From Selaginella moellendorffii (Eukaryota > Plantae > Lycopodiophyta): a stretch of 64,000 bases of DNA. Shown piece after piece: positions 1 to 47,418 of the stretch; position 1 is the stretch's first letter, and each line of letters starts with the position of its first letter. The position numbers and the translations under genes are program-made. The DNA is taken from contig NW_003314263.1 in assembly GCF_000143415.4 (NCBI RefSeq), forward strand, positions 2,916,041 to 2,980,040. The letters run 5' to 3'. Below the pieces are notes generated by a model that did not search any database, had not been told where the DNA came from, and saw nothing but the letters and a program-made list of their open reading frames with translations.

Positions 1-1261
1 GGCGACTCATGGGAAATTTTTCCCTCGGGATGCAAAAGGTGTGAGGGCTTTGATCGTCCGAGGATAACGACGAAGCCATGGAAGTGAGGGCAGAAAGGGT
101 ATGTTATGCGGCTGCTATGGCATTTTTGTTTCCACTTTTTAATTTTTTTTCTCTTTTAGGTGTCTGAGGATGGCCAAGTGCTAGAAGCTGTAAGACATTT
201 CTGGTCACCAGCAAACATTGTGTGTCTGGCAAGAACACGACAGAGCTGAAGCGATGATCGATGATTCCATCAAGAGAGGCGAGATTCTTTTGTGCTAAAA
301 TGCTATTACTCTCTAGAAAACGTCTAAAACATATTCTCCTTCTACCATATTGGTAAGAGAAGTTCTTCGAAAATTCCAGCAGCAGCAACTCAAAGTGGGA
401 TTTAACATTTGAATATGGATAATATCACCGCAGTGTGGATCATTGTCTCTGCGGGGGCATCTTCTTCCATTGCCTTCTAATCCTCTTGCCGCGCCCTAAA
501 CTTTGAATCAGTGCCTTGGCGGCACACTGACGTGGCAGCAATGAATGCATCCTCTTCAGAAATCGAGCATATCCCCTTCCCTTCCCGCCTAAATTCGCCC
601 TAGTCGTGCCCAAGTATCTTTGGTATATTCTCCGCATCTTTAACTTCACGGCCAGCAGAACACCGAGGGAGAAGAAGATCTCTGCCTAGGGTTTTACAGA
701 TCGATCGATAGATTTCTAGGCGCTTGGCAGCATTGAGAAATCATCCACAAGGTACATTCTTTCTTCCCTTGCTTGGTCGCCATCGCCATAGTTCACCGGG
801 ATTGTCTAGATCTGCGGCAGAATCCAGCGTGGGATTGATCGCTCAGGCTCTCTAGGCCGGGATTTCTTGGACTGGATGCCGGATTATCACGGATTCACCT
901 CTTTTGCAATAGCATCGATGCATGAGCGCGTGGAAGCGACTGTTCCAGCGGTGCTGTTGGCGTGATCGTCGTATTGGAGAGCGTGGTTCTCATCCACCAG
1001 CTGAGAATCCGGGCAGGCAGGGTAGATCGAGCTCCCACGGCTCCAGAAAATTGGTAAGCTATCTTCTAACTTATAGATCGACGTGCATAACTCATGAAGC
1101 TCCTCTTGCAGGAAGGACGAGCTTCCACTATCTCGCCGCCAAATCCACAGCCAACTGTGACTAGTTCTAGCAGAGGAAAGCATTGGTACGTTCTTCTTTT
1201 AAACTGGGAACTGACAAGTTTCTATCCAGTTCTTAGTTCCAGACGCTAGACTTCGAATGCA

Positions 1262-4200
1262 ATGAAAGAGAGAAGAGAGAATCTGGACATTCTCAAGCCC
1301 GAGATCATTGACATGGTTGTCAAGAAGATGAAGCATAACACATATCTCTCGCTCGAGTTCTTTACGCTGGCCATGAGAATCTCCAGCTTCCGGCACGACG
1401 TGGTGATGGTCATGATCCTTGGAGTCGATGGCAACTATTTCATGGCGATCACAGACATGCCCCGTGGAAACGATCTCTACGTGAAGACGAAGTATGACAG
1501 GAAGCTGCGGCCTTCACCTCGTCCCAGACAGCAAAAAGTCCCCGAAGCAGGCTTGGATAGGTTCAGCATGGTAGCAGTCCAACACCAGCTCGGGAGGAAG
1601 ACTTACACAGCCGACGAGCAGGAAGGCAACTACGTGGATCTGATAATGAGTCACAAGCAGTACAGGCAGGAGCTCCATCTTCACAGAGGGAAGAAGCAGT
1701 GGAACGTCCGTGCAGTCAGGGACAAGTTTCTGGTCTACGAGACACTTCCTCCCGCGAGTGACACTGGTGATGATCCTCTGGTGCTTTGCGGTCGCGACAA
1801 GATCGCCATTGTTCAGCCATTGTCAGTAACAGTGAACAACCAGGCGAAGAATGTCTCGTGGAACTCGTTGGGCTTGCAGGAATGCAAAGAAGAAAGGGAG
1901 AACTATATGGTGCCGAGCAGTAAGGAGGGTCAGCCGGGTTTAGTTCCAGGCAAAGGAGCTCTAGTCTTCCACAAGACTGTGAAGAAAGGAGGAGGGAGCT
2001 GGAGCTCCAAGACGGTTGCGAAGCTGGATAACAGGCTCAAGACTGGGATAACGCACCCCTACCAGCTCTGCGTGGTTCTCAAGAAGCTCAACGATGCCTC
2101 TCTCTCCCTCAAAATCTTTACGTGGGCCAAGACAATGCAGCACGACCTGGTGATGATCATGATCCTGCACAACTATCTCATGGTGATCACAAAACTGCCC
2201 CGTGACGACGATCTCTACGTGAAGACGAAGCATGGTAGGAAGCTCGGGCCACCACCTTGTCCGAGACTAAGTCGAGAGCAGGAATTCGCAGACCACCAAG
2301 CAGGCTTCAGTGTGGCAGCACTCCACCACCAGCTCGGGAAGAAGACCTACACAGCCGAAGAGCAGGAAAGCAACTGCGTGGATCCAATCCTGAGTCACAA
2401 GGAATACGGGCGGAAGCTCCACCTTCATAGTGGGAAGGAGCAGTGGAACATCCATGCAGTCGAGGACAAGTTTCTGGACTACGAGACAGTGAGCGACACC
2501 GATGATGATCCTCCAGGGGTTTGCAGTCGCACCAAGTTCGTCAGTGGTCAGCCTTTGTCAGTAACAGTGGACAACCGGGCGACGAAGGTCTCCTCGTCAT
2601 GGAACTCGTTTCCAGTGTGGAGCTTGCGAGAAGGAACAGAAGAAACGGGGAACTATATGGTGCTGAGCAGTAAGGTGGTGCTACCAGGTTTACTCCCAGG
2701 CAAAGGAGCTCTAGTCTCCGATGCTTTGTGCGAGATTTTGAAGGAAGGAGGAGGGAGCTGGAGGTCCGAGATAGTTGAGAAGCTGGACAGGCTCAAGCGC
2801 GGGAAAACGCACCCCCACCAGGTCTGCGTTGCTCTCAAGAAGATGAAACACGATGCATCTCTCAAGCTCTTTACGTGGGCCAAGACGATCCCTGGCTCTA
2901 AGCACGACTTGGTAAACTACTGCACGATGATCATGATCTTGGGAGATGACGGCAACTATCTCATGCCGGAGGCACTCTTCATTGATCTCCAGGAGCTCGG
3001 GCTTTGCATTGACACGTTTGCAGTGAACAACATGATCCCCTGCTACACAAGAGTGAACCGGATCCAGGAAGCTGTCGACCTCTACAGAAAGATACCATAC
3101 TTTTCAGACAATTGCATCCCCGGCCTCCTCGTCGACTGGTGCAGCACTGGTCTCCAGGGAAACAATAAGGTGGCAGTTCCAGACAGCGGCACGCTAGTCT
3201 TGAATGCTTTCTATGAGGCAATGGAAGAGGGAGGAGGGAGCTGGGACTTTGAGACGGCTGAAAATCTAGACAGACTTAAGCGTGGGATCAACATGATTCT
3301 CAAGAAGATCCAGCACGATGCATCTCTTGCGCTCGAGCTCTTTATCCTGGCCAAGACGATCCCTGGTTTCCAGCATGACCTGGCCAACTACTCAACGATG
3401 ATCATGATCCTGGGAAACGCTGGTAACTATCTCACGGCCAAGGCACTCTTCACTGAGATTCAGGAGCTCGGGCTTTGCATCGACATGGTTGCAGCCAACA
3501 ACATAATCCGCTGCTACACAAGCGTGATCCAGGATGCTCTTGACCTCCAAATTGGGAAACTCTGTGGTACCATCGGGATTGCGGTTGCTGGCAAGCATGG
3601 GAGCTTCGTGGTATTTTTCGACAGTCTCGTAACGGAGATTTCATCAGATCAAATTGGCCAACTATATCTAGAAGAGAAGGACAGGGAATACCGGAAGGTG
3701 ACTGTGATTCGTGACGAGCCACAACTACAAATCGGCATTGCTGGGTCCGTAAGTGACGCTCGCTGCATCATAATGGTACTGAAGATTGAGATGTCAAGTC
3801 AGGCTCAGCATGGAGTCACCATGACTTGTGAGGCAGCTGCAAATTTCGTCTTCCAGCGCTGCGTGGCTGATGAGCACTGTACGAGATCAAGCTTTTTCAT
3901 TTTTGACAACAAGAAACTCTTCGCTGTTAAGAGAGACAACACGCGCCAGTACCAGCTCTTGCAATTGGACGCAGTGGAACAGCCGTTTTTGACTATCGGT
4001 TCTGGTGGCCCGCATGCCGAAGGTATTCTGCGAGATCCACGGCCAGGTGTGGTTGGATTTTGTTTCCTTGAGATTGGATTAAGCTGCTTTTGAATTCTGC
4101 AGGGCAAGCTCACGGGAAGAAAGCCACTCTGGGCCAAATCACTAATCTTGGGCTCGATGCCCTCGCAGAAGCATGCGACAATGATCCACATTGCGGCGGA

Positions 4201-4335
4201 GACAAATATTATGCGTATTCAAATGTTAAATCCCACTTTGATGAGCTGCTGCTGAAATTTTCGAAGAAGAACTTCTCTTACCAATATGCGAGAAGAAAGA
4301 GACCAAGAGGTAAACTAAACATGGCTTTGTTTTAG
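1262..4335 (+). CDS. Chimeric protein (~1005 aa spliced): tandem partial copies of the PPR-SMR N-terminal region fused to a proteasome-beta/HslV-like Ntn-hydrolase domain; exons 1262-4046, 4103-4335
   Basis: The 943-aa ORF repeats DLYVKTK..RKL and LKLFTWAKTIPG..HDL.NY.TMIMILG blocks that also occur in the 45046-47418 PPR protein. The C-terminus reads LCG|TIGIAVAGKHGSFVVFFDS..EYRKV..IGIAGSVSDA..TIGSGGPHAEGIL. An in-frame GT-AG intron at 4047-4102 adds ATLGQITNLGLDALAEACDNDPHCGG. Confidence 0.7.
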
Positions 4336-4360
4336 ACATTTTCTAAGGAGTAATAGCATT

Positions 4361-4831
4361 TTAGCACAAAAGAATGTGGCCTCTCTTAATGGCATCGTCG
4401 ATCATCGCCTCAGCTCTGTCGTAGTGTTCTTGCCAGACACACAATGTTTGCCAATCAACATCCGGTGACCAGAAATTTCTTACAGCTTCTAGCACTTGGC
4501 CATCCTCAGACACCTAAAAGAGAAAAAAATTAAAAAGTGGAAAACAAAAGCCATAGCATACCCTTTCCGCCCTCACGTCCATGGCTTCGTCGTTATCCTC
4601 GTCAACAATAAAGACGATCAAAGCCCTCACACCTTTTGCATCCCGAGGGAAAAATTTCCCATGAGTCGCCACACTACCTTCATATGGCACTGGCAAATCC
4701 TTTGCTGTGTAGCTCAAGAGGTAGTACTCTCGCCCACTTAGTTCATCAATCATGGCCACCTTCCCAAGTATAAAATCGCCCTTATAATTCTTGGCCATGG
4801 CTTCCATCATCTGCCTGGCAATCGCCTCCAT
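4361..4831 (-). CDS. Orphan ~140-aa two-exon gene (exons 4831-4562, 4513-4361), convergent with the Ntn-domain gene
   Basis: ORF MEAIARQMMEAM...DVRAER, then a 48-nt GT..AG intron, then VSEDGQVLEAVRNFWSPDVDWQTLCVWQEHYDRAEAMIDDAIKRGHILLC*. An upstream exon is possible (tttag acceptor just before the ATG). Confidence 0.5.
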
Positions 4832-5439
4832 CGCGACCTCGACCTAAAACAATGCCTGGACAGCAATCCTTTATTTGGAGGGCTGCATCCAAAAGTGACT
4901 TACTCCCGGAATATTCTACAGCAGTCCTTTATTTGGAGGGTACTTTGAGCTGAGATGCTGCATCTTCATTAAAATAAAATCATCAAAACAGCTTATTATA
5001 ATCCGTTGGTCTCATGTTTTCTTGGTGGGTGTTGCAAGACCAACAGTTAATGAATGAATGAAAACAGTGCTGGCTATGTTTCAGAATTTGTCCAACATTG
5101 AATCCGGTTTTCAAGAAGCTCAAATAAGCCACCAACTCACACTTTCGGTGTCTTTGCCTACGTTCCAGCGCCTGGATACAAGGGCATAGGAGTGGACTTT
5201 AACTCCGCCCGAGTTTAAGGTACACACTCTCCGCTTGTTTGCCAAAAGAAGTGTCAATGCATAGTATTGCTTAAGTCCCATCAGAGACCAGGCCAAGAAG
5301 CAAAGCGAATCACCGTGTATTATAGCGTTGTGAGCATTGCAAGGCTCCCCGGCAGCATCTAACAAGGATTTAGCCATGCCATTTCTGTAACCTGAGAATT
5401 AAACGTCATTACAGACTTTCGGGACAATTGCGTCTCCAG

Positions 5440-5630
5440 CCTCCCATCGACTGGTGAAACGCTAGTCTTTAGGAAACAGTAAGGTGGCAGTTCCAGCAGA
5501 GGCACGCCAGTCTTAAACGCTTTTCTAAGGCGATGGAATGGGACTCCGAGACGGCTGAAGTCTGGACAGACTTAAGTGTTGGATCAACATGGTTCTCAAG
5601 AGACTCGAGCACAATGCATCTCTTGGGCTA
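5440..5630 (+). pseudogene. Degenerate PPR-SMR-derived fragment
   Basis: Similar to 3120-3330 (atcgactggtg..aaggtggcagttccag..gacagacttaag..gatcaacatg), with stops. Confidence 0.65.
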
Positions 5631-5914
5631 GTGAAGGTTTCAACTCCGTTCCCCGAGTCCAAGGTACACACTCTAAGATCTCGTTGTCTTTTCATAGCAG
5701 TTTGCAGACGAATTTCTATCCGGGACTGCAAGTTCATCGCCCTGCTTACAAGCATACAGCAAGGGAAAGCGGTGGAATCCAAGTATCTCATGTATGTCAA
5801 AGTAAGTCGCTCGAAAAGCTTATAAGAAGAGCGTAAGACTTTTTATGCATAGGTGAAAGTGTTCCCGGTGGAAGACGGTTCCAAGTAGGATACATCGATG
5901 TTGATGGTGGGGTT

Positions 5915-6460
5915 GTGACGAGGATTTGATAGCTGAGAGCAGTGGTACGATGCAAATGTCTCAATTCCAGGCTGCGATAAAGAAATCTTTTTTCGCTTTC
6001 ATTTATTTTTCGTGCTGCTGTGGGGATACATACGATCAGTGCAGCTTTCCAGGTCTTTCTGGTTCTGTTCTATTCGCGTAGCACGCTGCGATTTTTTTAT
6101 AATGTACCTCTTACGAGCAGCGGAGCATTCATTCCAGGTGCTAAGCTTGTGGCGGAATGTACACGAGTGAAGCCTTGCACGTCCCTTCCTTACAGGTCTC
6201 TGTCTAGTTTGGATAGAAACCTCTTTCCTTCTTTTGTTAAGTGTAGTTCTTCCATTCCATCTGAAGACCCTCTGAAGTTACATGACTACCGGCTGCTTGG
6301 AAAACCTTGATGAAGCTTATGAGCACGAAAGAGTCGCTTCACAATGCCATGGTCCTCGTAATGAGGATCGACAAAGACATCGCAATTTCGAGGTTGTGGA
6401 AACTTTATTTTTCTGGTTACTGAATTCGTTAGCGATGTGCTGGCCACAAAGTTTCCTCGC
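5915..6460 (+). pseudogene. Captured, decayed DHAD (ilvD) gene fragment with intron remnants
   Basis: cagtggtacgatgcaaatgtctcaattccaggctgcgataa and ttccattccatctgaagaccctctgaag..cacgaaagagtcgcttcacaatgccatggtc match the reverse complement of DHAD exons at ~62450-62540 and ~61710-61860. Confidence 0.85.
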
Positions 6461-7259
6461 CTTATAATAGATCACTTCGATTTATTGTGGATCTATTAAG
6501 TGAAGCATTGGTAGCTTGCCCTTCCGAGCAAACTATGTAAGCTGCACAGCTCCTGCTTGGTCTTTCAGCTCCTCGGGTGTGTTAAAATGATGGCCATGGG
6601 ATCAGCACCGACATTCATGGATTCACAGAGAAGGGGTGCTGTGGAGGCAATCAGCGCAAGAGGACTCGGAGCTGTGGTGAGATGCTGATCATGTAAATAG
6701 ATCTTCTTGCTGAGCAGTGTTGAGTGTGATTTCCTTTCCCTGGACTTTTCTTTGTTTTTCTTTAGGGAGGCCGGAGAAATCGTTTTCATCAAGACTAACC
6801 ACCTTGATTGTCTGGTTGATTATATGGAAGCGCGAACTACTCCCAGCGCATTTATGTCACAAAAGAAGGTTTTTTTTGTTTCTGCGTGACATAAAACTTT
6901 CTCTGTTTCACCAGCTTCATGTGAGAGAGATAATATCGCGCAGTACGATGGAGTTTTTTTGCATTTTTGTCGAGGTGCGTTTTGGCTTAGAGGGAGTTAC
7001 GCAAGGTTTACGCTTAACCGGTATCCTCGTCGACTGGAGTGATGGAGGGAGCATTCGTGATGGTTTTGCTGCAAAACGTTCCTTGGGGTAATCCCGACTC
7101 CAAGGTCACACTTAAGATTTCGCGTTCCCTTACGTCCATAGCAGTTTGCATATGGTCTTCTGGATCTCATTGTTCTCCGGGACTCAAGCTCATTGGCCGG
7201 CTTAGGAGAATAAAGCGGTGGAATGCAAGAATCTCACGTATGTCTCACTCGAAGCTTTC

Positions 7260-12510: not shown

Positions 12511-12589
12511 AGCTGTGCAGCTTACATAGTTTGCTCGGAAGGGCAAGCTACCAATGCTTCACTTAATAGATCCACAATAAATTGAAGTG

Positions 12590-14653: not shown

Positions 14654-14678
14654 AATTCTATTACTCCTTAGAAAATGT

Positions 14679-15943
14679 CTAAAACAAAGCCATGTTTAGT
14701 TTACCTCTCGGTCTCTTTCTTCTCGCATATTGGTAAGAGAAGTTCTTCTTCGCAAATTTCAGCAACAGCTCATCAAAGTGGGATTTAACATTTGAATATG
14801 CATAATATTTGTCTCCGCCGCAATGTGGATCATTGTCGCATGCTTCTGCGAGGGCATCGAGCCCAAGATTAGTGATTTGGCCCAGAGTGGCTTTCTTCCC
14901 GTGAGCTTGCCCTGCAGAATTCAAAAGCAGCTTAATCCAATCTCAAGGAAACAAAATCCAACCACACCTGGCCGTGGATCTCGCAGAATACCTTCGGCAT
15001 GCGGGCCACCAGAACCGATAGTCAAAAACGGCTGTTCCACTGCGTCCAATTGCAAGAGCTGGTACTGGCGCGTGTTGTCTCTCTTAACAGCGAAGAGTTT
15101 CTTGTTGTCAAAAATGAAAAAGCTTGATCTCGTACAGTGCTCATCAGCCACGCAGCGCTGGAAGACGAAATTTGCAGCTGCCTCACAAGTCATGGTGACT
15201 CCATGCTGAGCCTGACTTGACATCTCAATCTTCAGTACCATTATGATGCAGCGAGCATCACTTACGGACCCAGCAATGCCGATTTGTAGTTGTGGCTCGT
15301 CACGAATCACAGTCACTTTCTGGTATTCCCTGTCCTTCTCTTCTAGATATAGTTGGCCAATTTGATCTGATGCAATCTTCGTTACGAGACTGTCGAAAAA
15401 TACCACGAAGCTCCCATGCTTGCCAGCAACCGCAATCCCGATGGTACCACAGAGTTTCCCAATTTGGAGGTCAAGAGCATCCTGGATCACGCTTGTGTAG
15501 CAGCGGATTATGTTGTTGGCTGCAACCATGTCGATGCAAAGCCCGAGCTCCTGAATCTCAGTGAAGAGTGCCTTGGCCATGAGATAGTTACCAGCGTTTC
15601 CCAGGATCATGATCATCGTTGAGTAGTTGGCCAGGTCATGCTGGAAACCAGGGATCGTCTTGGCCAGGATAATGTGTCTGGGACGAGGTGACGGCCGCAG
15701 CTTCCTGTCATACTTCGTCTTCACGTAGAGATCGTTTCCACGGGGCATGTCTGTGATCGCCATGAAATAGTTGCCATCGACTCCAAGGATCATGACCATC
15801 ACCACGTCGTGCCGGAAGCTGGAGATTCTCATGGCCAGCGTAAAGAACTCGAGCGAGAGATATGTGTTATGCTTCATCTTCTTGACAACCATGTCAATGA
15901 TCTCGGGCTTGAGAATGTCCAGATTCTCTCTTCTCTCTTTCAT
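14679..15943 (-). CDS. Shorter PPR-fragment/proteasome-beta-like Ntn chimera (~402 aa spliced; exons 15943-14968, 14911-14679)
   Basis: Copy of 1262-4335 with an in-frame net 1809-bp deletion; the Ntn motifs and the 56-nt intron are intact. Confidence 0.7.
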
Positions 15944-23755: not shown

Positions 23756-24214
23756 CAGATAGGGGGGTGTATCCAGATTAGTTTTTTCTATGATTGTTTA
23801 GCTGATCAAGATTGTTTAAAGAGATTTAACAATCAAACCGAATGGACTATTTTCAGCCTACTTTCAGCAAGTATTAATTCTCTATCTTTCAATCAACAGC
23901 TTTGTGAAGGCTGATTATTGATAATCTAGACCATTAGAAACAATCAAAGACCTTTTACTTACTTCTCAATGTTATTCCGTTGAAAGCCATTTATGCCCTA
24001 AAGCTATATTTAGTCTTTATTTAAATAGGCCTAAAATGGGCTTATGAGAGAAACGTGAGCACAAGTACCAGACTCACGCATTCTTAGGTAATTGACAGCC
24101 TACTCAATTGTATTGTTTCTAGATCTCTTTCTTTTGGGTTTAACACCACTACCTCACATGGATTCTTGGGTCTTGTCCAAGAATCCATGCGAAATGATTT
24201 TGATTGGATGTGCG

Positions 24215-35721: not shown

Positions 35722-38000
35722 CTAAGCATCCATAGCAACTTGCTTCTCAGTCTCTAAACAAGTTCATAGAGATAAAAGGCTCAAACGGCGAGTCTAGAGC
35801 CACCAGCGTCCTGTTCACCGCATGGGTCACCTCCTTGCTCTTGTCCGACGCGTAGCCACACACGATGATCACTCGCTCCGGCCTCTCGAATCCCCGCGCG
35901 AGCTTCCGCCTGGACACGATCAATCCACTGGTGAGCGCCACCATCGCAGTCCCGGAGCTCATATCCTGGAGCCAGATAAACCACGCTCCCTGCCAGTCCT
36001 CCCAGATCCCTCTCGGGTAGAGCTCTGTGGAGGAGACACCCTCCCACACGTAGAAGGCCTCGCGAGCGTAGCCAAAGCAGTGGAGATGGTTGACGAGAGC
36101 ATCCGCCAGCCATCGCCCCCAGCGAGGAGGCTTGTCCATCCTCAGCTTGCGAAAAAACTCCCTCGAGTAGCTCTTGAGCTCCTTGATCGCGCGGAGGCCT
36201 TGCAGGATCTCGTTCAGGAACTCGTCCACGCTGGGATGATCATCTCCTCCTCCTCCTCCTGCTGCTGCTGTTGCTGCTGGTTTCGAGGACGACTTCATCA
36301 TCTCTCTCACCGCTCTCGAGTCCGCCACCTTGACGCTGCTCGTGTAGTGACCCAGGAGGATCGTGTACGTTTGCAGCGTCGGCTCCACGCCTCTCTCCGG
36401 CATGACTTTGGTGAGGATGAACTTGGCCGGCTCCACTTCTCGGGCCTTGAGGTAGCCATCGATGAGCGCGTTGCACATCTCGATGCTTGGACCGGCCTTC
36501 GTCTTGCAGGCTTTGTTGAACCATCGCCGGGCTTGCAGCATAGCTCCGGCTCTCGCCCACGAACTTATGAGCGTGCAGTACGTGAATCGATCTGGAGCGA
36601 GGCCGGCCTTTCGTATATCACCCAGGATGTTCTGCGCATGGCCAGGGAAGCCGCTGGAACCGTAACTCAGTATCACGTTGTTGTAGACGATCAAGTTTGG
36701 CTCTAGGCCGGAGCGGAGGTAGTCCGCGTAGAGCTCTGCCGCTGCTTTCGAGTCTCGAGCCTTGGCGTACATGTGGATGAGGATGGCGTACCCAGGCTTT
36801 CATCTGGTTGGCGGCTTCCCTGGCGTTTGTGAAGTCCCGCTGCTTGCAGAAGTTGTGGATCATTGTGTTGAACGTCTGCGCGTCGGCATTGCGGGGGGAG
36901 GCTCTCAAGTCGAGGAAGATCCGTTGGAGCTCCTTCCGGGAGCCGAACTTGCCGCACCAGTCGATGAGGAGGCCGAAGGTGCAATTGTCCGGGTGACAGC
37001 CAAAGTATGGCATCTTCCTGTAGAGGTCGAGAGCTTCCTGGATCCGGTTCACTCTTGTGTAGCAGCGGATCATGTTGTTCACTGCAAACGTGTCAAGGCG
37101 AAGCCCGAGCTCCTGTATCTCAACAAAAAGTGCCTCGGCCATGAGATAGTTCCCGTCATCTCCCAAGATCATGATCATCGTCGAGTAGTTTACCAAGTCG
37201 TGCTTGAAGCCTGGGATCGTCTTGGCCCACGTAAAGAGCTTGAGCGAGAGAGATGCGTCGTGCTTGATCTTCTTGAGAACCACGCAGACCTGGTGGGGGT
37301 GCATTATCCCATGCTTGAGCCTGTCCAGCTTCTCAACCATCTCGGAGCTCCAGCTCACTCCTCCTTCCTTCACAGTCTCGTACAAGGCATCGAAGACTAG
37401 CGCTCCTCTGCCTGGAACTAAACCCGGCAGCGCCACCTTACTGCTCGGCACCATATAGTTCCCCGGCAGAGCGATCGTTCCCTCCTTGCCTTCTTTTGGC
37501 AAGCTCCACACTGGAAACGAGTTCCACGACGAGGAAACATTCGTCGCCCGGTTGTCTAGTGACAGAGGCCGACCAATGACGAACTTGTCGCGACCACAAA
37601 GCACCGGAGGATCATCACCGGTGTCGGTCGCAGGAGGAAGTGTCTCGTAGACCAGAAACTTGTCCCCGACTGCATGGACATTCCATTGCTTCTGTCCCCT
37701 GTGAAGATGGAGCTCGCACCTGTATTGCTTGTGACCCAGAATCGGACCCATGTAGGTGCCTTCCTGCTTCTTCCCGAGCTGGTGTTGGAGTGCTACCCAC
37801 TGCCCACTGATTCTATCCAAGCCTGCTTGAGGGTCTGTGTGAACAAAGCGTTCCTGCTCTCGACTTAGTCGCGGACGAGGCGGCGGCCTCAACTTCCTAC
37901 CATACTACGTCTTCACGTAGAGATCGTCGTCCCGGCACAGGTCTCTGATCGCAGCCTTCGTCCAGTAGAAGCGAGGAAGGGGCTGAAACTTGGCACCCAT
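35722..38000 (-). pseudogene. PPR-SMR pseudogene (duplicate)
   Basis: AAG>TAG nonsense change near 37905, 23-nt frameshifting deletion near 36791, and deletions in the SMR C-terminus relative to 45046-47418. Confidence 0.92.
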
Positions 38001-38140: not shown

Positions 38141-40841
38141 TCTATAGACAAGCGTTGGCCTGTAGTCGCAAGAGCCGCGATTCAGCAGCAGCAGCAGCAG
38201 CTTGAGCCGGAGTTAAATCTCGGAAAGTATCAGGAGTAGAACCACTGTGTTTGAAGTAGCTGTGTTCTCTTTCGGTTCGTCCCAAGCTAGTAAACTGTTC
38301 ATGTCATTCGCTGATAGAGGCTGCTCTTTTTGCTTCATTGGAAGGAGGTTCGTCTTCTGCTGGTTCATTTTGTAGATGTTCTCCTCCACAGTGTTACATA
38401 TCTGGAAATGTCGTCAGTAATTGGAAAACAGAAGAAACGTACGTAACTTACAATGAATCTATGTACAAGTGTCTTAAGACGTTGGCCAATCCGGTGGACT
38501 AGATTGATAGCCTGAGCTTCTACTGCCGGAGTGAGCAAAGGCTCCACCAAAATAACGTGTTCTCTATTAAGTTCAGGCCATTGGCACCATGTTGTATGGG
38601 TAGTAACATGACTTGGATGTTCTCCTTAAATTCCAAGATGGAAGAACCCATTTGTCTGTGAAAAACACAAAACGAGCACATGAGTAAGAGTAAAACAGAT
38701 TATCGATATTACCTGAGAGGCTTTAGTCGAACCCAGCTGAGCTTGTTGCTCTTCAGTGCGTGTTTTAACAAGTCCAGCACTTCTTTCCACGTCGAGAACA
38801 CAAGAATTTTCACAAACGGATCGGGACTAAGAATTCTCCTGACGACAGCTTCAATCTTCAAAGTTGCAAAAGAATTAAAATAAAAAGACGACAAAGCCAG
38901 ATTACCTTTGTTCCGTACGACCCTGCCACGGTTATAGATTTTTCTTCGTCCTCTTCTTCTTCCTGGAGGATTTCCGCAATTTTCGAAGAAGCCGCTTCAG
39001 CATTGGCACAAGCAATATTAGATACATAAGTCTGCTGCACGTTGGACATGCAATGCGCTTGAAATCAGCACCGTTAGCTGGTGCTTTCTGGCGGTCCACA
39101 ATAAGATTCAAACCTGCGAAATAAAATGAAGATTTGCTCAGGAAACCAACAAAGTAAGACACCAAAAACTTACACTTGCCACAAAGCAAATGGCCGCATG
39201 GAAGGACCATTGCTCCAGATTCTATGCCATCGTGGCAAACTGGGCAAATTTCTCCTTCCAAACTGTTATGCCCCTCGTCCTTCTTATTCCTTAGACCCTG
39301 CAATCCGGAAATGAGAGGAGCTGCGAATAGAAGAAAACTTAAGCCTAATACCTTCAAGTATCTGAGCTGCCTCTTCACACGAGATAGATTCTCAACAGCA
39401 ACAAATTTTTCGTTGGTAAGCTCCGCGTTTCTAATTGCTATCTCGTAGCCTTCATCACCAAAAGGATTGCCGTCTGCAGCCTTGGCACCTTGCAAACATA
39501 GCCTTGTTGTCGACATGCTCAGCTCGTCCAATGCAGTTAGAACTAATTGTTGTGCTGTTGTAAAGCGTCTCGCCGCTGCATATTCGCTACGCAATGCCTG
39601 AATTGACATGGTTTGTCAAACAGACTTACAAATAAGCACAGGAGTGTTTACTTCAAGGTGGTTCGTTTCCGCTTTCATGTATGCAAGTAAAATTTTTAAA
39701 ACCATTTCCGTTTCAGAACATCTGTGCGTAACTTGTGAAAAGAAATATTTAAGCTCGAAGCAAAGAAAAACAAAAGAAAAAAGTTTAAAAAACAAAAAGA
39801 AGTTGCCTTACCGCAGCTACTGCTGCTCCTTTTCTCCTGCCTGTGTTCGTCTCAGTTTCCTTGTTTCCCTTATCCAGTGAACGTACTTGAGAAACAAAGG
39901 CGTCTTCTGCAGTAACAATGCCATCTAATTCAGCTGCTCGGGAGCATATTTCTGTTTATCCAAGATTTGCATACTGGCCACTGACGTACTTCCTTCGTAA
40001 TTCGTCGCATTGACTGATCAGCATATCATCCCTCAGAGTTCTTGGAATTTTGCTCAATGCGTCATCCTTGCAGTTTCTGAGTGACTCTTCCAAATTGTGT
40101 AAAATATGGACTTTCTGAAGCGGATCAACTTCAAAATTAGTCGCATTTTCCTCCGCGGCTGCTAGTGCTTCTCGGTCAATGGAGACAGCCATGGGGATGT
40201 TTTCCTCGATAATCGCCAGACCTGCCAGTCCGTTCAACGAATCAACAAGATCTCGTTGAGCTTCTTCTCCTTCAGTTTTAGCTTTTTCAATTAAGACCTG
40301 AAGACTCTAATACCAAGGTTCCTTACCTCCAAGACTTCATCCATCGGCCTGCAATGAGCGTGGTGATGCCTGCAACGAGCGTACTCCCGAACTCCCCACT
40401 TGAGGATGGCAACAAGCTTGTCGCAGCTTCAACAAGGGGTTCATTAACTTTGAGGTATTCATATGATTTAGAGGTCGACCAGCACCTAATGAGTACTTCT
40501 CAATAGCTTCTCTGGCTCTCTTCACGCATTGCTCGTGTTGTTGCCTATAAAAGTGGTTCTCAACACCCGAAAACTTGAGCCATGTAATTCGCTCTTCTTG
40601 AGGAGGAATATCTAGCTGGTCTATGACATCGATCTTCATAGACCGCCACATAATCTCACGGAAAAAGGAATGAGCAAAGTCAACTGCTCCCATTTTTCCT
40701 TCCTGGAGAGCAACGAGTGTTACTTACAATAAAAAGGAAAAAACACATAGTACCTCGCAAGGATGTTTTATAGCTTTGCTGCCACCAAGTATGATTGTCA
40801 AACGGCTCTGCTTGTAAGAATCTAAGCAAGCCATGCAAATC
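38141..40841 (-). pseudogene. SHPRH 3'-half pseudogene (duplicate)
   Basis: RING CPVCHD..CGHLLCGKC, QACCHPQVG and VHRIGQ are present, but there are many deletions (including ~0.6 kb) and no 5' half. Confidence 0.92.
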
Positions 40842-42030
40842 CCTCCTCCTTCCTTCACAGTCTTGTGGAAGACTAGAGCTCCTTTGCCTGGAACTAAACC
40901 CGACTGACTCTCCTTACTGCTCGGCACCGTATAGTTCTCCGTTTCTTCTTTGCATTCCCGCAAGCCCAATGAGTTCCACGAGACATTCTTTGCCCGGTTG
41001 TCCACTGTTACTGACAAGGGCCGAACAATGACGATCTTGTCATGACTGCAAAGCACCAAAGGATCATCACTGGTGTCGCTCACGTGAGGAAGTGTCTCGT
41101 AGACCAGAAACTTGTCCCTGACTGCATGGACGTTCCACTCCTTCCTGCTGTGAAGGTGGAGCTCCTGCCTGTACTGCTTGTGACTCATGATCAGATCCAC
41201 GGAGTTGCTTTCCTTCTTGTAGGCTGTTTAAGTCTTCCTCCCGAGCTGGTGTTGGACTGCTACCATGCTGAATCTATCCAAGCCTACTTGGGGGTCTTTC
41301 TGCTGTCTCGGACGATGTGGCGGCCACAGCTTCCTCGTCTTCACATAGAGATCGTTTCCACGGGGCATGTCTGTGATCACCATGAGATAGTTGCCATCGA
41401 CTCCAAGGATCATGACCATCACCACGTCGTGCCGGAAGCTGGAGATTCTCATGGCCAGCGTAAAGAAATCGAGCGAGAGATATGTGTCATGCTTCATCTT
41501 CTTGACAACCATGTCAACGATCTTGGGCTTAAGACTGTCCAGATTCTCTCTTCTCTCTTTCATTGCATCGAAGTCTAGCGTCTGGAACTAAGAACTGGAT
41601 AGAAACTTGTCAGTTCCCAGTTTAAAAGAAGAACGTATTGGAGGGCTGTGGATTCGGCGGCGAGATAGTGGAAGCTCGGCTTGTTCCTTCCTGCAAGAGG
41701 AGCTTCATGAGTTTTGCAAGTCGATTGATAAGTTAGAAGATATCTTACCAATTTGCTGGAGCTGTGGGAGCTCGATCTGCCCTGCCTCCCCAGATTCTCA
41801 GCTGTGGATGAGAACGAAGCCCTCCAATACGACGATCATGCAGACGGCACCGCTGGAACATTTGCTTCCACGCACTCATGCATCAATGGTATTGCAAGAG
41901 AGGTGAAGCCATCCAGTCCAAGAAATCCCGGGCTAAAGAGCCTGAGCAATCAATCCCGCACTGGATTCTACCGCAGATATGGACAATCACGGCGAGCTGT
42001 CGCAATGGGGACCTAGAAAGGGAAGAAAGA
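40841..42030 (-). pseudogene. Fourth copy of the chimera 5' flank and PPR-derived N-terminus (ATG 41563), fused to the SHPRH remnant
   Basis: MKERRENLDSLKPKIVDMVVKKMKH... matches the 1262 ORF; TAC>TAA stop at 41228; ORF 40724..41200 runs into SHPRH-derived sequence. Confidence 0.85.
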
Positions 42031-43855
42031 ATGTACTTTTTTCCTAAGATCTATAAATTAAATGCATGGAAATAAAAAAGATTGAATGTATAGTATAAGA
42101 ACTAGATGATGAGTGTTGTTGCCCTTCCATTTTCTTCTGTAAAACTATGCTCTAAACAAGACAATTATGACATGCAAACCAAATTCTAATTAATTGAGAG
42201 AAAATGTCATTGAGAGAAACACTGTCAACTCCTTGTTCATTTAATTCAAAATATTCATTGTCCATTAAAAAGGAGAAAAAATTATTTTGAAAGAATATTT
42301 TATTTTATTGCCCTTGAACAAAAAAAGCTATATGCACTTTTGCCCAACATTTAAAGGGCATTTTTAAAAAACACCCATGTAAAATGGCTCAAAAAGGGCC
42401 GAAAGGGCATCAATTTTTTGCCTTTCAGTAATTGCCTTTGGAAATAAATACTAAAAGACAATACCTCATAAGTTTCATGTTTTGGCTTATTATAGAATTT
42501 GAAGATTTTGATCTCATCCACTTGATTGATCCAGTTGTTACTGCATGCAATTCTCATCATTAAAATCAAAATTGAAGCCACCCTTTTTTCACATGGTTCT
42601 GTCTATTTAGGGTTTAGGGTTTATTCTAGAAAAAAGATAAAGGATTAATCACATGCAGCAAATGAATTTTTTTTTTCTAGGCTTTGAAAGAATAAGTATA
42701 CATGTAGCACCCAACAACTAGATGCATTAAACCACAATGCAATGGATGCAAATGGATTTCTTGTCTTTGGTCTAGTAAAGTTCAACAGGCAAAAGTAATT
42801 TTCACATTGGCAAAAGAGAGGGACTCCAAGATTAAAATCAGGACAAGGAAATCAATTTGTATATTGTAAATGCCTCCAGCTGAGCCCACAAATGTGTATA
42901 TATAATCAAAAGAGTTCCCTTGTTGTGCATAAGCTGTTCCAAAATCATTCAATATGTGATATTTCAATACGTATGGTATTACCCATGTTGAGGCCCCGGG
43001 AATCCAAGCCAGAAATTTGAATCGCGGCATCACCTTGTCAAATGCAGACGTGGCACTCACATTGGTCGGAGCCCATTAAAGGATTGAATTTATAGACGGG
43101 CTAGAAACTCTGCCACGCTCGGTTGTTCTCTCGCTGCCTTTGCGAGTTCTTGGTTCTCTGCCGGGGATCCTCCCTCGAGGAAAACACCCATGATTCGATC
43201 GTCTCTTGCCCGGCTCGATTTCATGAGCACTCTCCGTTTGAACGCTCGACTTGCAAATCTTCGATAGAGCAGCTAGGCAGAATTGCGGTCGAGCTCCCAA
43301 CGCAAGATCTTTCGTGCAATCTCTCGCTGCTCCTAAATCTCGATCTGTTCTTCAAGGTTTGGAGGATTTTCTAGCGGTGCCATAGGCCGGAGGACGAAAC
43401 CACTAGCTGTGGAGAAGCCGGAAAGCTCTAGAAACTAAACCCGAGACCAAGATCGATCGATCGGATAGCACATTGCTGTGACAGCGCTGTGAGCTGCTAC
43501 CCTAGTGCTCCCAGCCTGGCCACGTTGAAAGAAGCGCCATGGCCGAGCAGCCCCGCCATGGTCTATTATGACGTGGCATGCCGCTAACCAACGTGGAAAT
43601 TCCGGCCACGTCGCCCTAATTAGGGCGCCACATCCGATCAAAATACTGATGGGACACCTCTCTGGAAGTATATGATTTGTTTCACCACAGAGAGTCAGGC
43701 TAGGTGGCCCCCGATCAGTACAATCCATACGCAACTTTCAAGTCCGGAAAAAACGTGAGATTTTTGTAGAGATCGATCGCATGCCAAGTCATCACATAGA
43801 TAAGACTCTGTCTGACTATAAATCCAAACAGCCCGAGGTTCAGCACCACAACAAC

Positions 43856-45045: not shown

Positions 45046-47418
45046 CTAAGCATCCATGGTGAGCTCTATAGCAACTTGCTTCTCCCACAGCCAGTCTCTA
45101 AACAAGTTCCCCTCGCACATAAATCTCCCCATGGAGATGAAAGGCTCAAACGGCGAGTCTAGAGCCACCAGCGTCCTGTTCACCGCATGGGTCACCTCCT
45201 TGCTCTTGTCCGACGCGTAGCCACACACGATGATCACTCGCTCCGGCCTCTCGAATCCCCGCGCGAGCTTCCGCCTGGACACGATCAATCCACTGGTGAG
45301 CGCCACCATCGCAGTCCCGGAGCTCATATCCTGGAGCCAGATAAACCACGCTCCCTGCCAGTCCTCCCAGATCCCTCTCGGGTAGAGCTCTGTGGAGGAG
45401 ACACCCTCCCACACGTAGAAGGCCTCGCGAGCGTAGCCAAAGCAGTGGAGATGGTTGACGAGAGCGTCCGCCAGCCATCGGCCCCAGCGAGGAGGCTTGT
45501 CCGTCCTCAGCTTGCGGAAAAACTCCCTCGAGTAGCTCTTGAGCTCTTTGATCGCGCGGAGGCCTTGCAGGATCTCGTTCAGGAACTCGTCCACACCGGG
45601 ATGATCATCTCCTCCTCCTCCTCCTCCTGCTGCTGCTGCTGGTTTCGAGGACGACTTCATCATCTCTCTCACTGCTCTCGAGTCCGCCACCTTGACGCTG
45701 CTCGTGTAGTGGCCCAGGAGGATCGTGTACGTTTGCAGCGTCGGCTCCACGCCTCTCTCCGGCATGACTTTGGTGAGGATGAACTTAGCCGGTTCCACTT
45801 CTCGGGCTTTGAGGTAGCCATCGATGAGCGCGTTGCACATCTCGATGCTTGGACCGGCCTTCGTCTTGCAGGCTTTGTTGAACCATCGCCGGGCTTGCAG
45901 CATAGCTCCGGCTCTCGCCCACGAACTTATGAGCGTGCAGTACGTGAATCGATCTGGAGCGAGGCCGGCCTTTCGTATATCACCCAGGATGTTCTGCGCA
46001 TGGCCGGGGAAGCCGCTGGAACCGTAACTCAGTATCACGTTGTTGTAGACGATCAAGTTTGGCTCTAGGCCGGAGCGGAGGTAGTCTGCGTAGAGCTCTG
46101 CCGCTGCTTTCGAGTCTCGAGCCTTGGCGTACATGTGGATGAGGATGGCGTACGTTGCAGAGGAGAATGGAATCCCCCAGGCTTTCATCTGGTTGGCAGC
46201 TTCCCTGGCGTTTGCGAAGTCCCGCTGCTTGCAGAAGTTGTGGATCATTGTGTTGAACGTCTGCGCGTCGGCATTGCGGGGGGAGGCTCTCAAGTCGAGG
46301 AAGATCCGTTGGAGCTCCTTCCGGGAGCCGAACTTGCCGCACCAGTCGATGAGGAGGCCGAAGGTGCAATTGTCCGGGTGACAGCCAAAGTATGGCATCT
46401 TCCTGTAGAGGTCGAGAGCTTCCTGGATCCGGTTCACTCTTGTGTAGCAGCGGATCATGTTGTTCACTGCAAACGTGTCAAGGCGAAGCCCGAGCTCCTG
46501 GATCTCAACAAAAAGTGCCTCGGCCATGAGATAGTTCCCGTCATCTCCCAAGATCATGATCATCGTCGAGTAGTTTACCAAGTCGTGCTTGAAGCCTGGG
46601 ATCGTCTTGGCCCACGTAAAGAGCTTGAGCGAGAGAGATGCGTCGTGCTTGATCTTCTTGAGAACCACGCAGACCTGGTGGGGGTGCGTTATCCCACGCT
46701 TGAGCCTGTCCAGCTTCTCAACCATCTCGGAGCTCCAGCTCGCTCCTCCTTCCTTCACAGTCTCGTACAAGGCATCGAAGACTAGCGCTCCTTTGCCTGG
46801 AACTAAACCCGGCAGCGCCACCTTACTGCTCGGCACCATATAGTTCCCCGGCAGAGCGATCGTTCCCTCTTTGCCTTCTTCTGGCAAGCTCCACACTGGA
46901 AACGAGTTCCACGACGAGGAAACATTCGTCGCCCGGTTGTCCATTGTTACTGACAGAGGGCGACCAATGACGAACTTGTCGCGACCACAAAGCACCGGAG
47001 GATCATCACCAGTGTCGGTCGCGGGAGGAAGTGTCTCGTAGACCAGAAACTTGTCCCCGACTGCATGGACATTCCACTGCTTCTGTCCCCTGTGAAGATG
47101 GAGCTCGCGCCTGTATTGCTTGTGACCCAGAATCGGACCCACGTAGTTGCCTTCCTGCTCCTCGGCTATGTAAGGCTTCTTCCCGAGCTGGTGTTGGAGT
47201 GCTACCCACTGCCCACTGATTCTATCCAAGCCTGCTTGAGGGTCTGCGCGAACAAAGCGTTCCTGCTCTCGACTTAGTCGCGGACGAGGCGGCGGCCTCA
47301 GCTTCCTACCATACTTCGTCTTCACGTAGAGATCGTCGTCACGGCACAGGTCTCTGATCGCAGCAATCTGTTCCTTCGTCCAGTAGAAGCGAGGAAGGGG
47401 CTGAAACTTGGCACCCAT
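45046..47418 (-). CDS. Intronless PPR-SMR protein (P-class PPR repeats plus C-terminal Smr domain), 790 aa
   Basis: PPR motifs (YSTMIMILG, FNTMIHNFCK, YNNVILSYG, TYCTLISSWARAG, CNALIDGYLK) and Smr-like WFIWLQDMSSGTAMVAL..PERVIIVCG..LDSPF. Confidence 0.93.
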   Translation of the reverse strand: MGAKFQPLPRFYWTKEQIAAIRDLCRDDDLYVKTKYGRKLRPPPRPRLSREQERFVRADPQAGLDRISGQWVALQHQLGKKPYIAEEQEGNYVGPILGHKQYRRELHLHRGQKQWNVHAVGDKFLVYETLPPATDTGDDPPVLCGRDKFVIGRPLSVTMDNRATNVSSSWNSFPVWSLPEEGKEGTIALPGNYMVPSSKVALPGLVPGKGALVFDALYETVKEGGASWSSEMVEKLDRLKRGITHPHQVCVVLKKIKHDASLSLKLFTWAKTIPGFKHDLVNYSTMIMILGDDGNYLMAEALFVEIQELGLRLDTFAVNNMIRCYTRVNRIQEALDLYRKMPYFGCHPDNCTFGLLIDWCGKFGSRKELQRIFLDLRASPRNADAQTFNTMIHNFCKQRDFANAREAANQMKAWGIPFSSATYAILIHMYAKARDSKAAAELYADYLRSGLEPNLIVYNNVILSYGSSGFPGHAQNILGDIRKAGLAPDRFTYCTLISSWARAGAMLQARRWFNKACKTKAGPSIEMCNALIDGYLKAREVEPAKFILTKVMPERGVEPTLQTYTILLGHYTSSVKVADSRAVREMMKSSSKPAAAAGGGGGGDDHPGVDEFLNEILQGLRAIKELKSYSREFFRKLRTDKPPRWGRWLADALVNHLHCFGYAREAFYVWEGVSSTELYPRGIWEDWQGAWFIWLQDMSSGTAMVALTSGLIVSRRKLARGFERPERVIIVCGYASDKSKEVTHAVNRTLVALDSPFEPFISMGRFMCEGNLFRDWLWEKQVAIELTMDA

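What the first reader, a model, noticed from the sequence alone, without database searches (positions are those of the whole stretch)
1262..4093. New chimeric gene assembled from circularly permuted tandem copies of the neighbouring PPR-SMR gene, still open over 2.8 kb
The ORF runs PPR residues ~236-298, jumps back to residue ~20 (NYFM|AITDMPRGNDLYVKTK), repeats the N-terminal block twice, adds a further partial block, then switches to the Ntn domain. It visibly differs from the parent at 45046-47418 by many substitutions and indels, yet has no stop codon. Most other captured fragments in the window are full of stops. Inference: the reading frame may be under selection.
Basis: partly seen in the sequence, partly recalled or inferred. 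Interest (0 to 1): 0.75.

Follow-up and report, generated by a model that had tools for sequence, protein, structure and literature searches.

The report
Spikemoss PPR-fragment / proteasome-like fusion gene
A spikemoss (Selaginella moellendorffii) gene starts with about 770 codons stitched from repeated, rearranged copies of the front of a neighbouring PPR gene and ends in a very divergent proteasome-type protease domain; the copied part has stayed readable for a long time while its amino acids drift almost freely, so it probably only has to carry translation through to the protease.

Summary
Window 1262-4093(+) is an unbroken 943-codon frame. It holds four pieces of the PPR gene at 45046-47418(-): residues 231-299, 20-298, 18-361 and 198-337. 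A proteasome-beta/HslV-like Ntn domain follows.

It is not unannotated. It is exon 1 of SELMODRAFT_404512 (100% match). Its last 15-23 codons are intron read-through, and the Ntn domain continues in a second exon.

It is not young: dS between modules is about 0.29.

The frame is maintained. At least 17 indels in modules M1 and M2, and about 25 across all comparisons, are multiples of three; in neutral DNA nearby only 6 of 32 are. There is no stop (P about 0.01 for two modules alone). Three further copies are open: one in this window and two gene models on the other haplotype. Pseudogene controls at 2-7% divergence are already broken.

The module amino acids evolve almost neutrally (omega 0.86, against 0.45 for the parent). 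The Ntn domain keeps every residue invariant in its Selaginella-only family.

Best reading: selection keeps the frame open so that translation reaches the Ntn domain, and the PPR-derived part is a dispensable leader or propeptide. Expression is untested.

The scan noted the same fusion before on other DNA of this genome (s1-395659, s1-382094).

The parts
749..1261 (+). Upstream region shared by all four copies of the chimera (A, B, C, D); presumed promoter and 5' UTR
   Evidence: A 749-1997 matches C at 87%, A 758-1178 matches D at 72%, and A 1-1530 matches B at 94%. A and B show no difference over 1001-1261. The promoter function is inferred.
1262..1447 (+). Module M0: start codon plus a copy of parent residues 231-299
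   Evidence: BLASTP ORF 3-62 = parent 231-299. Nucleotide identity is 82%, and net indels are 12 and 15 nt.
1445..2183 (+). Module M1: copy of parent residues 20-298, joined to M0 at the permuted junction 299|20
   Evidence: Substitution-only identity is 88.8%. There are 8-9 M1-specific indels, all in frame.
2185..3146 (+). Module M2: copy of parent residues 18-361, including two PPR motifs; second copy of the same 299|18-20 junction
   Evidence: Substitution-only identity is 88.9%. There are 4-5 M2-specific indels, all in frame. Pfam PPR_2 matches at aa 584-610.
3163..3547 (+). Module M3: copy of parent residues about 198-337, including one PPR motif
   Evidence: 82% identity; net indels of 12, 18 and 6 nt. 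Pfam PPR matches at aa 710-738.
3548..4046 (+). First exon part of the proteasome-beta/HslV-like Ntn domain. The putative Gly-1|Thr1 processing site is at aa 769|770, with the Thr codon at 3569-3571
   Evidence: Pfam Proteasome. Family alignment with invariant GTIG, FDSL, K, GxAG, SFF, IGSG. Fold search. Coordinates. The exon probably ends at 4046, because GILRDPRP is homologous to the family's ILxxPVxG.
4047..4102 (+). Probable 56-nt GT..AG intron; the ORF's stop codon at 4091-4093 lies inside it. The JGI models use a donor 24 nt upstream, at 4022|4023
   Evidence: Sequence read. tblastn of paralogue P0009 breaks at 4048/4102. Database models P0017, P0001 and P0006 continue in the next exon.
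4103..4335 (+). Second exon: the rest of the Ntn domain (LGLDA..AC..CGG motifs)
   Evidence: Translation. Matches family-invariant columns and paralogues at 40-48%. The 3' end of the gene was not settled.
14921..15943 (-). Copy B (SELMODRAFT_404515): the same gene with an in-frame 1809-nt deletion of most of M1, all of M2 and most of M3; open, 340 codons
   Evidence: 100% identical to P0006. Differs from A at 0.74% in the ORF against 2.5% in the flanks. Junction read.
40739..42039 (-). Copy C: 5' fragment (upstream region, M0 and most of M1), with one stop codon
11362..12462 (+). Copy D: short dead copy. A large deletion joins the start codon out of frame to the last PPR motif and the Ntn domain; it has several stops and frameshifts
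45046..47418 (-). Parent: intact intronless PPR gene, 790 aa, source lineage of the modules
   Evidence: The parent branch has omega 0.36-0.45.
35750..38000 (-). P2: pseudogene duplicate of the parent; used as an internal neutral control
   Evidence: 2.1% substitutions from the parent, yet one in-frame stop and three frameshifting indels of 23, 8 and 1 nt.

Best explanation
The ORF is exon 1 of a long-maintained, Selaginella-specific gene (SELMODRAFT_404512). The part under functional constraint is the C-terminal proteasome-beta/HslV-like Ntn domain. The first 769 codons are a leader built from the 5' third of the neighbouring PPR gene. An older piece (M0/M3, parent residues 231-337) is joined to the Ntn domain. 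Tandem in-frame copies of a permuted unit (299|18-20) lie in between. Translation starts at the ATG at 1262, so any stop or frameshift in the leader abolishes the Ntn product. Selection therefore removes stops and out-of-frame indels but barely constrains the leader's amino acids. Shown: the anatomy, frame maintenance, near-neutral module substitutions, conservation of the Ntn domain and the Ntn fold. Inferred: as in other Thr1 Ntn hydrolases, the domain needs a free N-terminal Thr, so the leader would act as an oversized propeptide removed by self-cleavage at Gly769|Thr770. That would explain why its sequence and length are free to vary.
For: Frame maintenance. All net indels between modules and parent are multiples of 3, and out-of-frame blocks never exceed 5 nt. 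The count is 8-9 M1-specific, 4-5 M2-specific and 4 shared events, plus in-frame events in M0 and M3, in A vs C and in A vs P0018. Neutral controls in the same window are A/B flanks 3 of 20 in frame, A/C upstream 1 of 5 and A/D 2 of 7. No stop: P = 0.012 for 237 shared codons of M1 plus M2 under simulation with the observed mutation spectrum. No conversion tracts from the parent: 8-29% divergence in every 30-codon window. Parallel copies B, P0001 and P0018 are open. P2 (2.1% diverged) and D (7%) are already broken. Relaxed leader: omega is 0.86, not different from neutral, while the parent is 0.45 with P = 0.011. B lacks 603 leader codons in frame and is intact; its counterpart on the other haplotype (P0018) is full length. 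Constrained Ntn domain: A/B keep all 47 columns invariant among paralogues of 31-35% identity. All 11 polarizable A/D amino-acid differences lie on the D lineage. Fold hits are all proteasome beta or HslV. D's deletion puts the Ntn domain out of frame with the ATG, and D has decayed. Paralogues P0009 and P0011 start 15-18 residues before the same GTIG motif, while P0010, P0014 and P0012 carry other long N-terminal extensions.
Against: There is no expression or protein evidence. The 90% clusters hold only the 2011 JGI (EFJ) models and no RefSeq XP entry, although XP entries exist for Ntn paralogues; this is a weak hint that evidence-based annotation did not call the gene. The A-B differences in the Ntn part are 3 non-synonymous to 2 synonymous, too few to show recent constraint. 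Low A-B divergence around the ORF (0.74% against 2.5%) also covers 260 bp upstream and the intron, so it may be gene conversion rather than selection. P1 vs P2 indels are 5 of 8 in frame, so coding-derived DNA may favour in-frame indels somewhat. The structure model is of low confidence overall (mean pLDDT 45; 71-90 only in the Ntn core). The equivalence of Lys812 to proteasome Lys33 rests on motif and spacing only. Self-cleavage is pure inference.
Confidence: 0.55

Rival explanations
1. The PPR-derived modules are themselves the functional novelty. On this view the repeated domain, with 2-3 PPR motifs, is a new protein part under a mix of purifying and diversifying selection that averages to omega near 0.9. 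The frame is kept for the sake of the modules.
For: The frame has been kept over a long time. Three PPR motifs are still recognised by Pfam. The parent's N-terminal region is itself constrained, with omega 0.36-0.45.
Against: The codon-position spectrum of module substitutions is flat: 29/26/25 and 18/19/27. Omega cannot be told from 1. Many module-specific deletions of 1-5 residues are scattered along the unit. Copy B has lost 603 module codons and stays intact. No module relatives were found outside Selaginella.
Confidence: 0.2
2. This is a non-functional, decaying chimeric pseudogene family. The long open frame is a survivor by chance, noticed only because it is open.
For: Near-neutral dN/dS in the modules. 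Copies C and D are dead. There is no expression evidence and no RefSeq model in the clusters.
Against: Neutral DNA here gives 0.06-0.2 out-of-frame indels per substitution. With 144 substitutions on M1 and M2, that predicts 9-29 frameshifts, and none is seen. P(no stop) is about 0.01 for two modules alone. Four copies are open independently. The Ntn domain keeps all family-invariant residues, and all 11 polarizable changes fall on the dead copy D.
Confidence: 0.12
3. Gene conversion, from the intact parent or among copies, keeps repairing the modules, so the frame stays open without selection.
For: A and B are much more alike around the ORF than in the flanks, including non-coding parts. A' and B' share six residues that A lacks. 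Divergence from the parent is graded: in the shared segment corresponding to parent nt 691-897 it is M2 7%, M1 12%, M3 19% and M0 22%.
Against: No window of M1 or M2 is closer than 8% to the parent. Each module carries its own private in-frame indels, which conversion from the parent would erase. Conversion among chimera copies cannot remove a defect without selection choosing the intact donor.
Confidence: 0.05

Closest known systems
Proteasome beta subunits / HslV (Ntn threonine proteases, Pfam PF00227) with N-terminal propeptides removed by autolysis at Gly-1|Thr1
   Same: Same fold by structure search and a weak Pfam match. GT at the start of the domain, Asp at Thr1+17, a GSG motif and a D-x-x-(S/C)-G-G motif are present. 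The region upstream of the Thr varies in length and sequence among family members. That is how propeptides behave (established knowledge of the family).
   Different: Sequence identity to any solved proteasome subunit is 12-19%. Relatives were found only in S. moellendorffii among 1.84 billion representative proteins. The leader has 769 residues and derives from another gene. Cys replaces the Ser169-equivalent residue. Assembly into rings, catalysis and processing are untested.
Chimeric new genes formed by duplication and fusion of gene fragments (the jingwei type in Drosophila; fragment capture by Pack-MULEs or Helitrons in plants) - from my own knowledge, not tested here
   Same: A fragment of a neighbouring gene is duplicated, rearranged and fused in frame to a domain of a different gene. 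There are several local copies in different states of decay.
   Different: No transposon hallmarks were established. The 460-bp inverted repeats at 1-461 and 4156-4670 are copies of the gene's own 3' region plus a small neighbouring ORF. Most captured fragments of that kind decay; here the frame has been held across dS of about 0.29.
PPR-SMR proteins (review PMC3858433, listed; not read in detail)
   Same: The parent has a clear PPR tract, with Pfam E down to 5e-46. Its C-terminal 170 residues have an Smr-domain cluster as nearest neighbour in the protein atlas, at score 0.84, which is a lead only.
   Different: Pfam finds no Smr domain in the parent's C-terminus even at E of 10, and a word search of residues 560-790 found nothing. 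The chimera itself carries only the non-PPR N-terminal region plus 2-3 PPR motifs, and no C-terminal part.

Membership tests
Proteasome beta / HslV-type Ntn hydrolase (PF00227) | Significant match to the family profile | tested here: inconclusive
   A scores 18.6-21.5 bits and B 21.4 bits, against a cut-off of 22.4. Paralogues P0010, P0011 and P0012 score 26-30 bits and pass. A links to them at E 5e-9 to 5e-8.
Proteasome beta / HslV-type Ntn hydrolase (PF00227) | Alpha-beta-beta-alpha Ntn fold | tested here: met
   The AlphaFold model of P0006 (copy B) has pLDDT 71-90 in the core. The listed top 50 Foldseek PDB hits are all proteasome subunits or HslV/ClpQ, with E about 1e-6 and probability 1.00. 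The overall model is of low confidence.
Proteasome beta / HslV-type Ntn hydrolase (PF00227) | Catalytic Thr1 preceded by Gly, with Asp17, Lys33, Ser129, Asp166 and Ser169 equivalents | tested here: inconclusive
   G769|T770, D787 (= Thr1+17), an invariant K812, the GSG motif at 914-916 and D-x-x-C-G-G in exon 2 are all invariant in the family. The mapping onto canonical numbering is by motif and spacing only, and Ser169 is Cys.
Proteasome beta / HslV-type Ntn hydrolase (PF00227) | Autocatalytic removal of the propeptide and proteolytic activity | not testable with these tools
   Needs expression of the wild type and a Thr770 mutant.
PPR protein | Tandem array of 35-residue PPR motifs able to bind RNA | tested here: not met
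   The chimera keeps only 2-3 isolated motifs (PF01535 at 32.5 bits, PF13041 below its cut-off). The parent has a full tract.
   No Pfam hit at E up to 10. The nearest atlas cluster is an Smr-domain protein at 0.84, below the level that counts.
Transposon-mediated gene-fragment capture (Pack-MULE / Helitron) | Terminal inverted repeats with target-site duplications, or Helitron ends, bounding the captured fragments | not tested
   Only noted that the inverted repeats flanking A are copies of the gene's own 3' region. No search for element ends was made.
Protein-coding gene under selection | Frame kept against the neutral indel and stop spectrum | tested here: met
Protein-coding gene under selection | dN/dS below 1 in the region in question | tested here: not met
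   Module omega is 0.86, P = 0.21 against neutral simulation. It is met for the parent (0.45, P = 0.011). For the Ntn domain it is met only through conservation of invariant residues and the 11:0 polarity test.
Protein-coding gene under selection | Transcription and translation | not testable with these tools
   No RNA data tool was available.

The most novel reading that the evidence does not exclude
The Selaginella-only Ntn domain may be a self-cleaving module that makes any N-terminal in-frame fusion harmless, or even useful. Whatever is fused in front would be released as a separate polypeptide. That would explain why the family collects scavenged pieces of unrelated genes: here a permuted, amplified PPR front end, and in earlier scan notes fumarase, sirtuin/lipase and TOM2A pieces. 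The PPR-derived leader would then be a released product free to evolve, and the locus a natural nursery for new proteins made from gene fragments.
Probability: 0.15. Interest if true: 0.85.

Novelty: new variant of a known kind. Interest (0 to 1): 0.55.

Why it matters
The locus carries its own controls: dead sister copies, a pseudogenised parent copy and an in-frame deletion allele. It shows selection holding a 2.3-kb stretch of scavenged coding DNA open while ignoring what it encodes. That separates 'frame under selection' from 'protein under selection', two things usually conflated when long ORFs in young chimeras are taken as evidence of function. It also points to an undescribed, lineage-restricted family of proteasome-like Ntn domains that tolerate very different N-terminal fusions. 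If self-cleavage is shown, this would give a mechanism for recurrent, low-cost gene fusion in a plant genome.

Tried and rejected
1. Chance ORF: rejected. No other frame exceeds 128 aa, and simulation gives P = 0.012 for two modules alone.

2. Compensating frameshifts: none. Out-of-frame alignment blocks are 2-5 nt and are gap-placement artefacts.

3. Recent conversion from the parent: no low-divergence tracts.

4. Tandem Repeats Finder does not see the modules, because the period exceeds 500 and divergence is too high. Structure was mapped by BLAST instead.

5. Sequence search of the Ntn exon against the PDB gave only chance Lsm hits. The family profile gave one weak archaeal proteasome hit at E 0.03. 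The fold search was needed.

6. Word search of the Ntn exon and of the parent's C-terminus found only Selaginella fragments or nothing.

7. The HMMER hits P0007 (a Bartonella adhesin) and P0008 are repetitive or low-complexity false positives.

8. The small ORFs in the flanking inverted repeats have no Pfam family. One reference in that first attempt contained stops and was corrected.

9. Expression: gene identifiers were absent from the full-text library and from the two held supplements of the Selaginella expression-atlas preprint.

The DNA of the other-haplotype copies could therefore not be fetched, and allelic dN/dS could not be computed.

The exons were searched by reference, and database models (P0006, P0017, P0001) were used where a spliced protein was needed.

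12. The order of module duplications was not resolved. M0 shares one deletion with M3 and another with M1.
Full report
**Source and annotation**

The window is from Selaginella moellendorffii. Database protein P0006 (SELMODRAFT_404515, 4.46-Mb scaffold) is 100% identical to window 15943-14990(-). P0017 (SELMODRAFT_404512, same scaffold) is 100% identical to window 1262-4024 over its first 921 residues.

The flagged ORF is therefore exon 1 of a gene model from the published genome annotation, named only 'hypothetical protein'. No paper in the searchable library, and neither of the two held supplements of the Selaginella expression-atlas preprint, mentions it or its relatives.

**Observation**

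The ORF 1262..4093(+) has 943 codons. No other frame in the stretch exceeds 128 aa. The neighbouring ORF 45046..47418(-), 790 aa, is an intact PPR gene.

BLASTP and BLASTN map the ORF onto it as four pieces:
- M0: ORF aa 1-62, parent 231-299.
- M1: ORF aa 62-307, parent 20-298.
- M2: ORF aa 306-628, parent 18-361.
- M3: ORF aa about 634-762, parent about 198-337.

After M3 comes a domain with a weak Pfam Proteasome match. Both junctions carry the same derived Thr at parent position 22. The junction therefore arose once and was then duplicated in tandem, and M1 and M2 diverged inside the chimera, not in separate PPR genes.

**Corrections to the anatomy**

The stop at 4091-4093 lies in an intron. 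The database models splice from about 4022 to 4103 and continue with the rest of the Ntn domain.

Comparison with paralogues suggests a better donor 24 nt downstream (CCAG|GTGTGG, exon end 4046). The read-through residues GILRDPRP are homologous to the family's conserved IL-x-x-P-V-x-G stretch, which the current models delete. tblastn of paralogue P0009 breaks at 4048/4102. The intron would then be 4047-4102, 56 nt.

They were searched by reference, and database proteins were used where a spliced protein was needed.

**The gene is one of a local family**

Self-comparison shows that window 1-6552 is an inverted duplicate of 12510-17255.
- Copy B (14921-15943, -) is the same gene with 1809 nt removed in frame. 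It is open and annotated as SELMODRAFT_404515.
- Copy C (40739-42039, -) is a 5' fragment with one stop.
- Copy D (11362-12462, +) has a large deletion that joins the start codon out of frame to the last PPR motif and the Ntn domain. It is riddled with stops and frameshifts.
- The parent also has a duplicate, P2 (35750-38000, -). It is only 2.1% diverged but already carries a stop and three frameshifting indels.

On the other haplotype scaffold the cluster look-up found two full-length open models. P0001 (SELMODRAFT_420045) differs from A at 8 of 864 aligned residues. P0018 (SELMODRAFT_420041, 920 aa) carries the B-type variants of the Ntn domain. B's deletion is therefore specific to one haplotype.

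**Is the frame under selection? Indels**

A nucleotide alignment made without regard to codons shows that every net indel between modules and parent is a multiple of three. The only out-of-frame blocks are 2-5 nt long and come from split gaps.

In the three-way protein alignment there are 8-9 M1-specific, 4-5 M2-specific and 4 shared gap events. M0 and M3 add about five more, A versus C two, A versus P0018 two, and B one.

The neutral indel spectrum in the same window is very different:
- 3 of 20 in frame in the A/B flanks.
- 1 of 5 upstream of A/C.
- 2 of 7 in the dead copy D.
- 5 of 8 in P1/P2, a mixed case because the parent lineage is constrained.

Even at a neutral in-frame probability of 0.3-0.5, at least 17 in-frame events out of 17 is P < 1e-5. 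Scaled another way, neutral DNA here shows 0.06-0.2 frameshifting indels per substitution. The 144 substitutions on the M1 and M2 branches predict 9-29 such indels, and none is seen.

**Is the frame under selection? Stops and conversion**

I placed the observed number of substitutions, with the observed spectrum, on the parsimony ancestor. This gives a mean of 2.4 and 1.9 stops for M1 and M2, and a joint probability of 0.012 of seeing none in the 237 shared codons. My rough extrapolation to M0, M3 and the rest of M2 gives about 7 expected stops.

There are no tracts of recent conversion from the parent: every 30-codon window is 8-29% diverged.

**Is the protein sequence of the modules under selection?**

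It is hardly so. Pairwise Nei-Gojobori omega is 0.51-0.70. Branch-specific values are 0.85 (M1), 0.79 (M2) and 0.36 (parent).

Against a neutral simulation with the observed spectrum, the synonymous fraction in M1 plus M2 is 0.294 against 0.264 expected. That implies omega 0.86, P = 0.21. The parent branch is significantly constrained (0.446 against 0.264, P = 0.011). Substitutions are spread evenly over codon positions: 29/26/25 and 18/19/27.

What is selected is openness.

**The Ntn domain**

A full HMMER scan of 1.84 billion representative proteins with the Ntn exon found real relatives only in S. moellendorffii. They are P0009 (XP_024526380), P0010 (LOC9635678), P0011 and P0012, at 35-41% identity. 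Two repetitive false positives also appeared. Three of these paralogues pass the Pfam Proteasome cut-off.

In the family alignment, 47 columns are invariant, copy B included. They include G-T-I-G at the start of the domain, F-D-S-L (Asp at Thr+17), an invariant Lys, G-x-A-G, S-F-F, I-G-S-G, L-G-L-D and C-G-G. A has the same residues.

An AlphaFold model of P0006 is poor overall (mean pLDDT 45) but reaches 71-90 in the Ntn core. All listed top 50 Foldseek matches in the PDB are proteasome subunits or HslV.

Between A and the dead copy D there are 32 amino-acid differences. Eleven can be polarised with the paralogues, and all 11 are changes on the D lineage. Six of six remain after removing stops and a shifted tail. 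The A/B lineage has therefore kept the conserved positions that D lost. The A-B differences in this domain (3 non-synonymous, 2 synonymous) are too few to test recent constraint.

**Mechanism proposed**

Paralogues P0009 and P0011 begin only 15-18 residues before the G|T-I-G motif. P0010, P0014 and P0012 have other long N-terminal extensions, and that of P0010 is itself internally repetitive.

In Thr1 Ntn hydrolases the nucleophile must be the free N-terminal residue, so the preceding propeptide is removed autocatalytically and is poorly conserved. This is established knowledge of the family and was not tested here.

If this domain works the same way, everything upstream of Thr770 is a propeptide. 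Its sequence and length would be nearly free, but it must stay in frame because translation starts at 1262.

This fits four observations. Omega is near 1 while the frame is maintained. The in-frame 603-codon deletion allele B has stayed intact. Copy D, whose deletion broke the frame, has died. The family carries varied N-terminal extensions.

Frame maintenance and Ntn conservation are shown. Translation, cleavage and activity are inferred.

**History (partly resolved)**

Module dS against the parent is 0.24-0.27, and between modules 0.29. Neutral divergence is 2.5% for A-B, and P1-P2 differ at 2.1%. The array is therefore old relative to the local segmental duplications.

In the shared segment corresponding to parent nt 691-897, divergence from the parent is graded: M2 7%, M1 12%, M3 19%, M0 22%. 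M0 and M3 share a 15-18-nt deletion and several substitutions. This suggests an older fusion of one PPR piece (231-337) to the Ntn domain, into which the tandem units were later added. M0 also shares a 12-nt deletion with M1, so the order of events is not settled.

**Evidence against, and limits**

- Expression is untested.
- The 90%-identity clusters contain only the 2011 JGI models and no RefSeq XP protein, whereas XP entries exist for Ntn paralogues.
- Low A-B divergence around the ORF extends into non-coding DNA, so it may reflect conversion.
- Model P0001 splices out a 171-nt in-frame GT..AG stretch (window 2822-2992 in A) that is open in A and P0018. Whether this hides a defect in that allele is unknown.
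- The 'SMR' label of the parent is unconfirmed.

**Earlier scan notes (unchecked leads)**

The same fusion was noted on other pieces of this genome. s1-395659 reports signs of past selection. s1-382094 describes a copy with a frameshift and no RNA reads. Other members of this Ntn family were noted as fused to pieces of fumarase, sirtuin/lipase and TOM2A, some said to be transcribed. I could confirm only that family members carry diverse N-terminal extensions.

**Verdict**

The gene is old and already annotated, though undescribed in the literature.

Noticed in passing
window 35750-38000 (-) and 38249-39949 vs 47558-49951: A roughly 10-kb segmental duplication carries the PPR gene together with fragments of an SNF2/RING helicase gene. 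The second PPR copy (P2) is a pseudogene with a stop at about codon 35 and a frameshift near codon 414. JGI model SELMODRAFT_404554 (P0002, 1398 aa) fuses helicase and PPR parts into one protein.
   Followed up: partly
window 4022-4103: The published gene models (P0017, P0001, P0006) use a splice donor at 4022|4023 that deletes eight residues conserved in the Ntn family. A donor at 4046|4047 restores them.
   Followed up: yes
window 2822-2992: A 171-nt in-frame stretch with GT..AG ends is spliced out of the other-haplotype model SELMODRAFT_420045. It is kept in SELMODRAFT_404512 and SELMODRAFT_420041. It may be a spurious intron or may mask a defect in that allele.
   Followed up: partly
window 4514-4831 (-) and 14183-14500 (+); related sequence at 1-461 and 16745-17338: A 105-codon ORF (MEAIARQMME...) convergent with the chimera's 3' end is duplicated almost unchanged with each copy of the locus. 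It forms part of the roughly 460-bp inverted repeats flanking A. It has no Pfam family.
   Followed up: partly
P0010 / P0014 (LOC9635678 and SELMODRAFT_406982, another scaffold): Another member of the Ntn family has a 210-290-residue N-terminal extension. It contains tandem repeats of about 30 residues whose copy number differs between the two proteins.
   Followed up: no
window 20000-24000, including N run 22354-22808: A very AT-rich block (GC 20-25%) with strong AT skew and an assembly gap separates the chimera cluster from the rest of the window.
   Followed up: no
window 43963-44616 (+): A 217-codon cysteine-rich ORF lies between copy C and the parent gene. Another scan note calls this a Pin-II inhibitor duplicate (s1-380735). 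I did not examine it.
   Followed up: no
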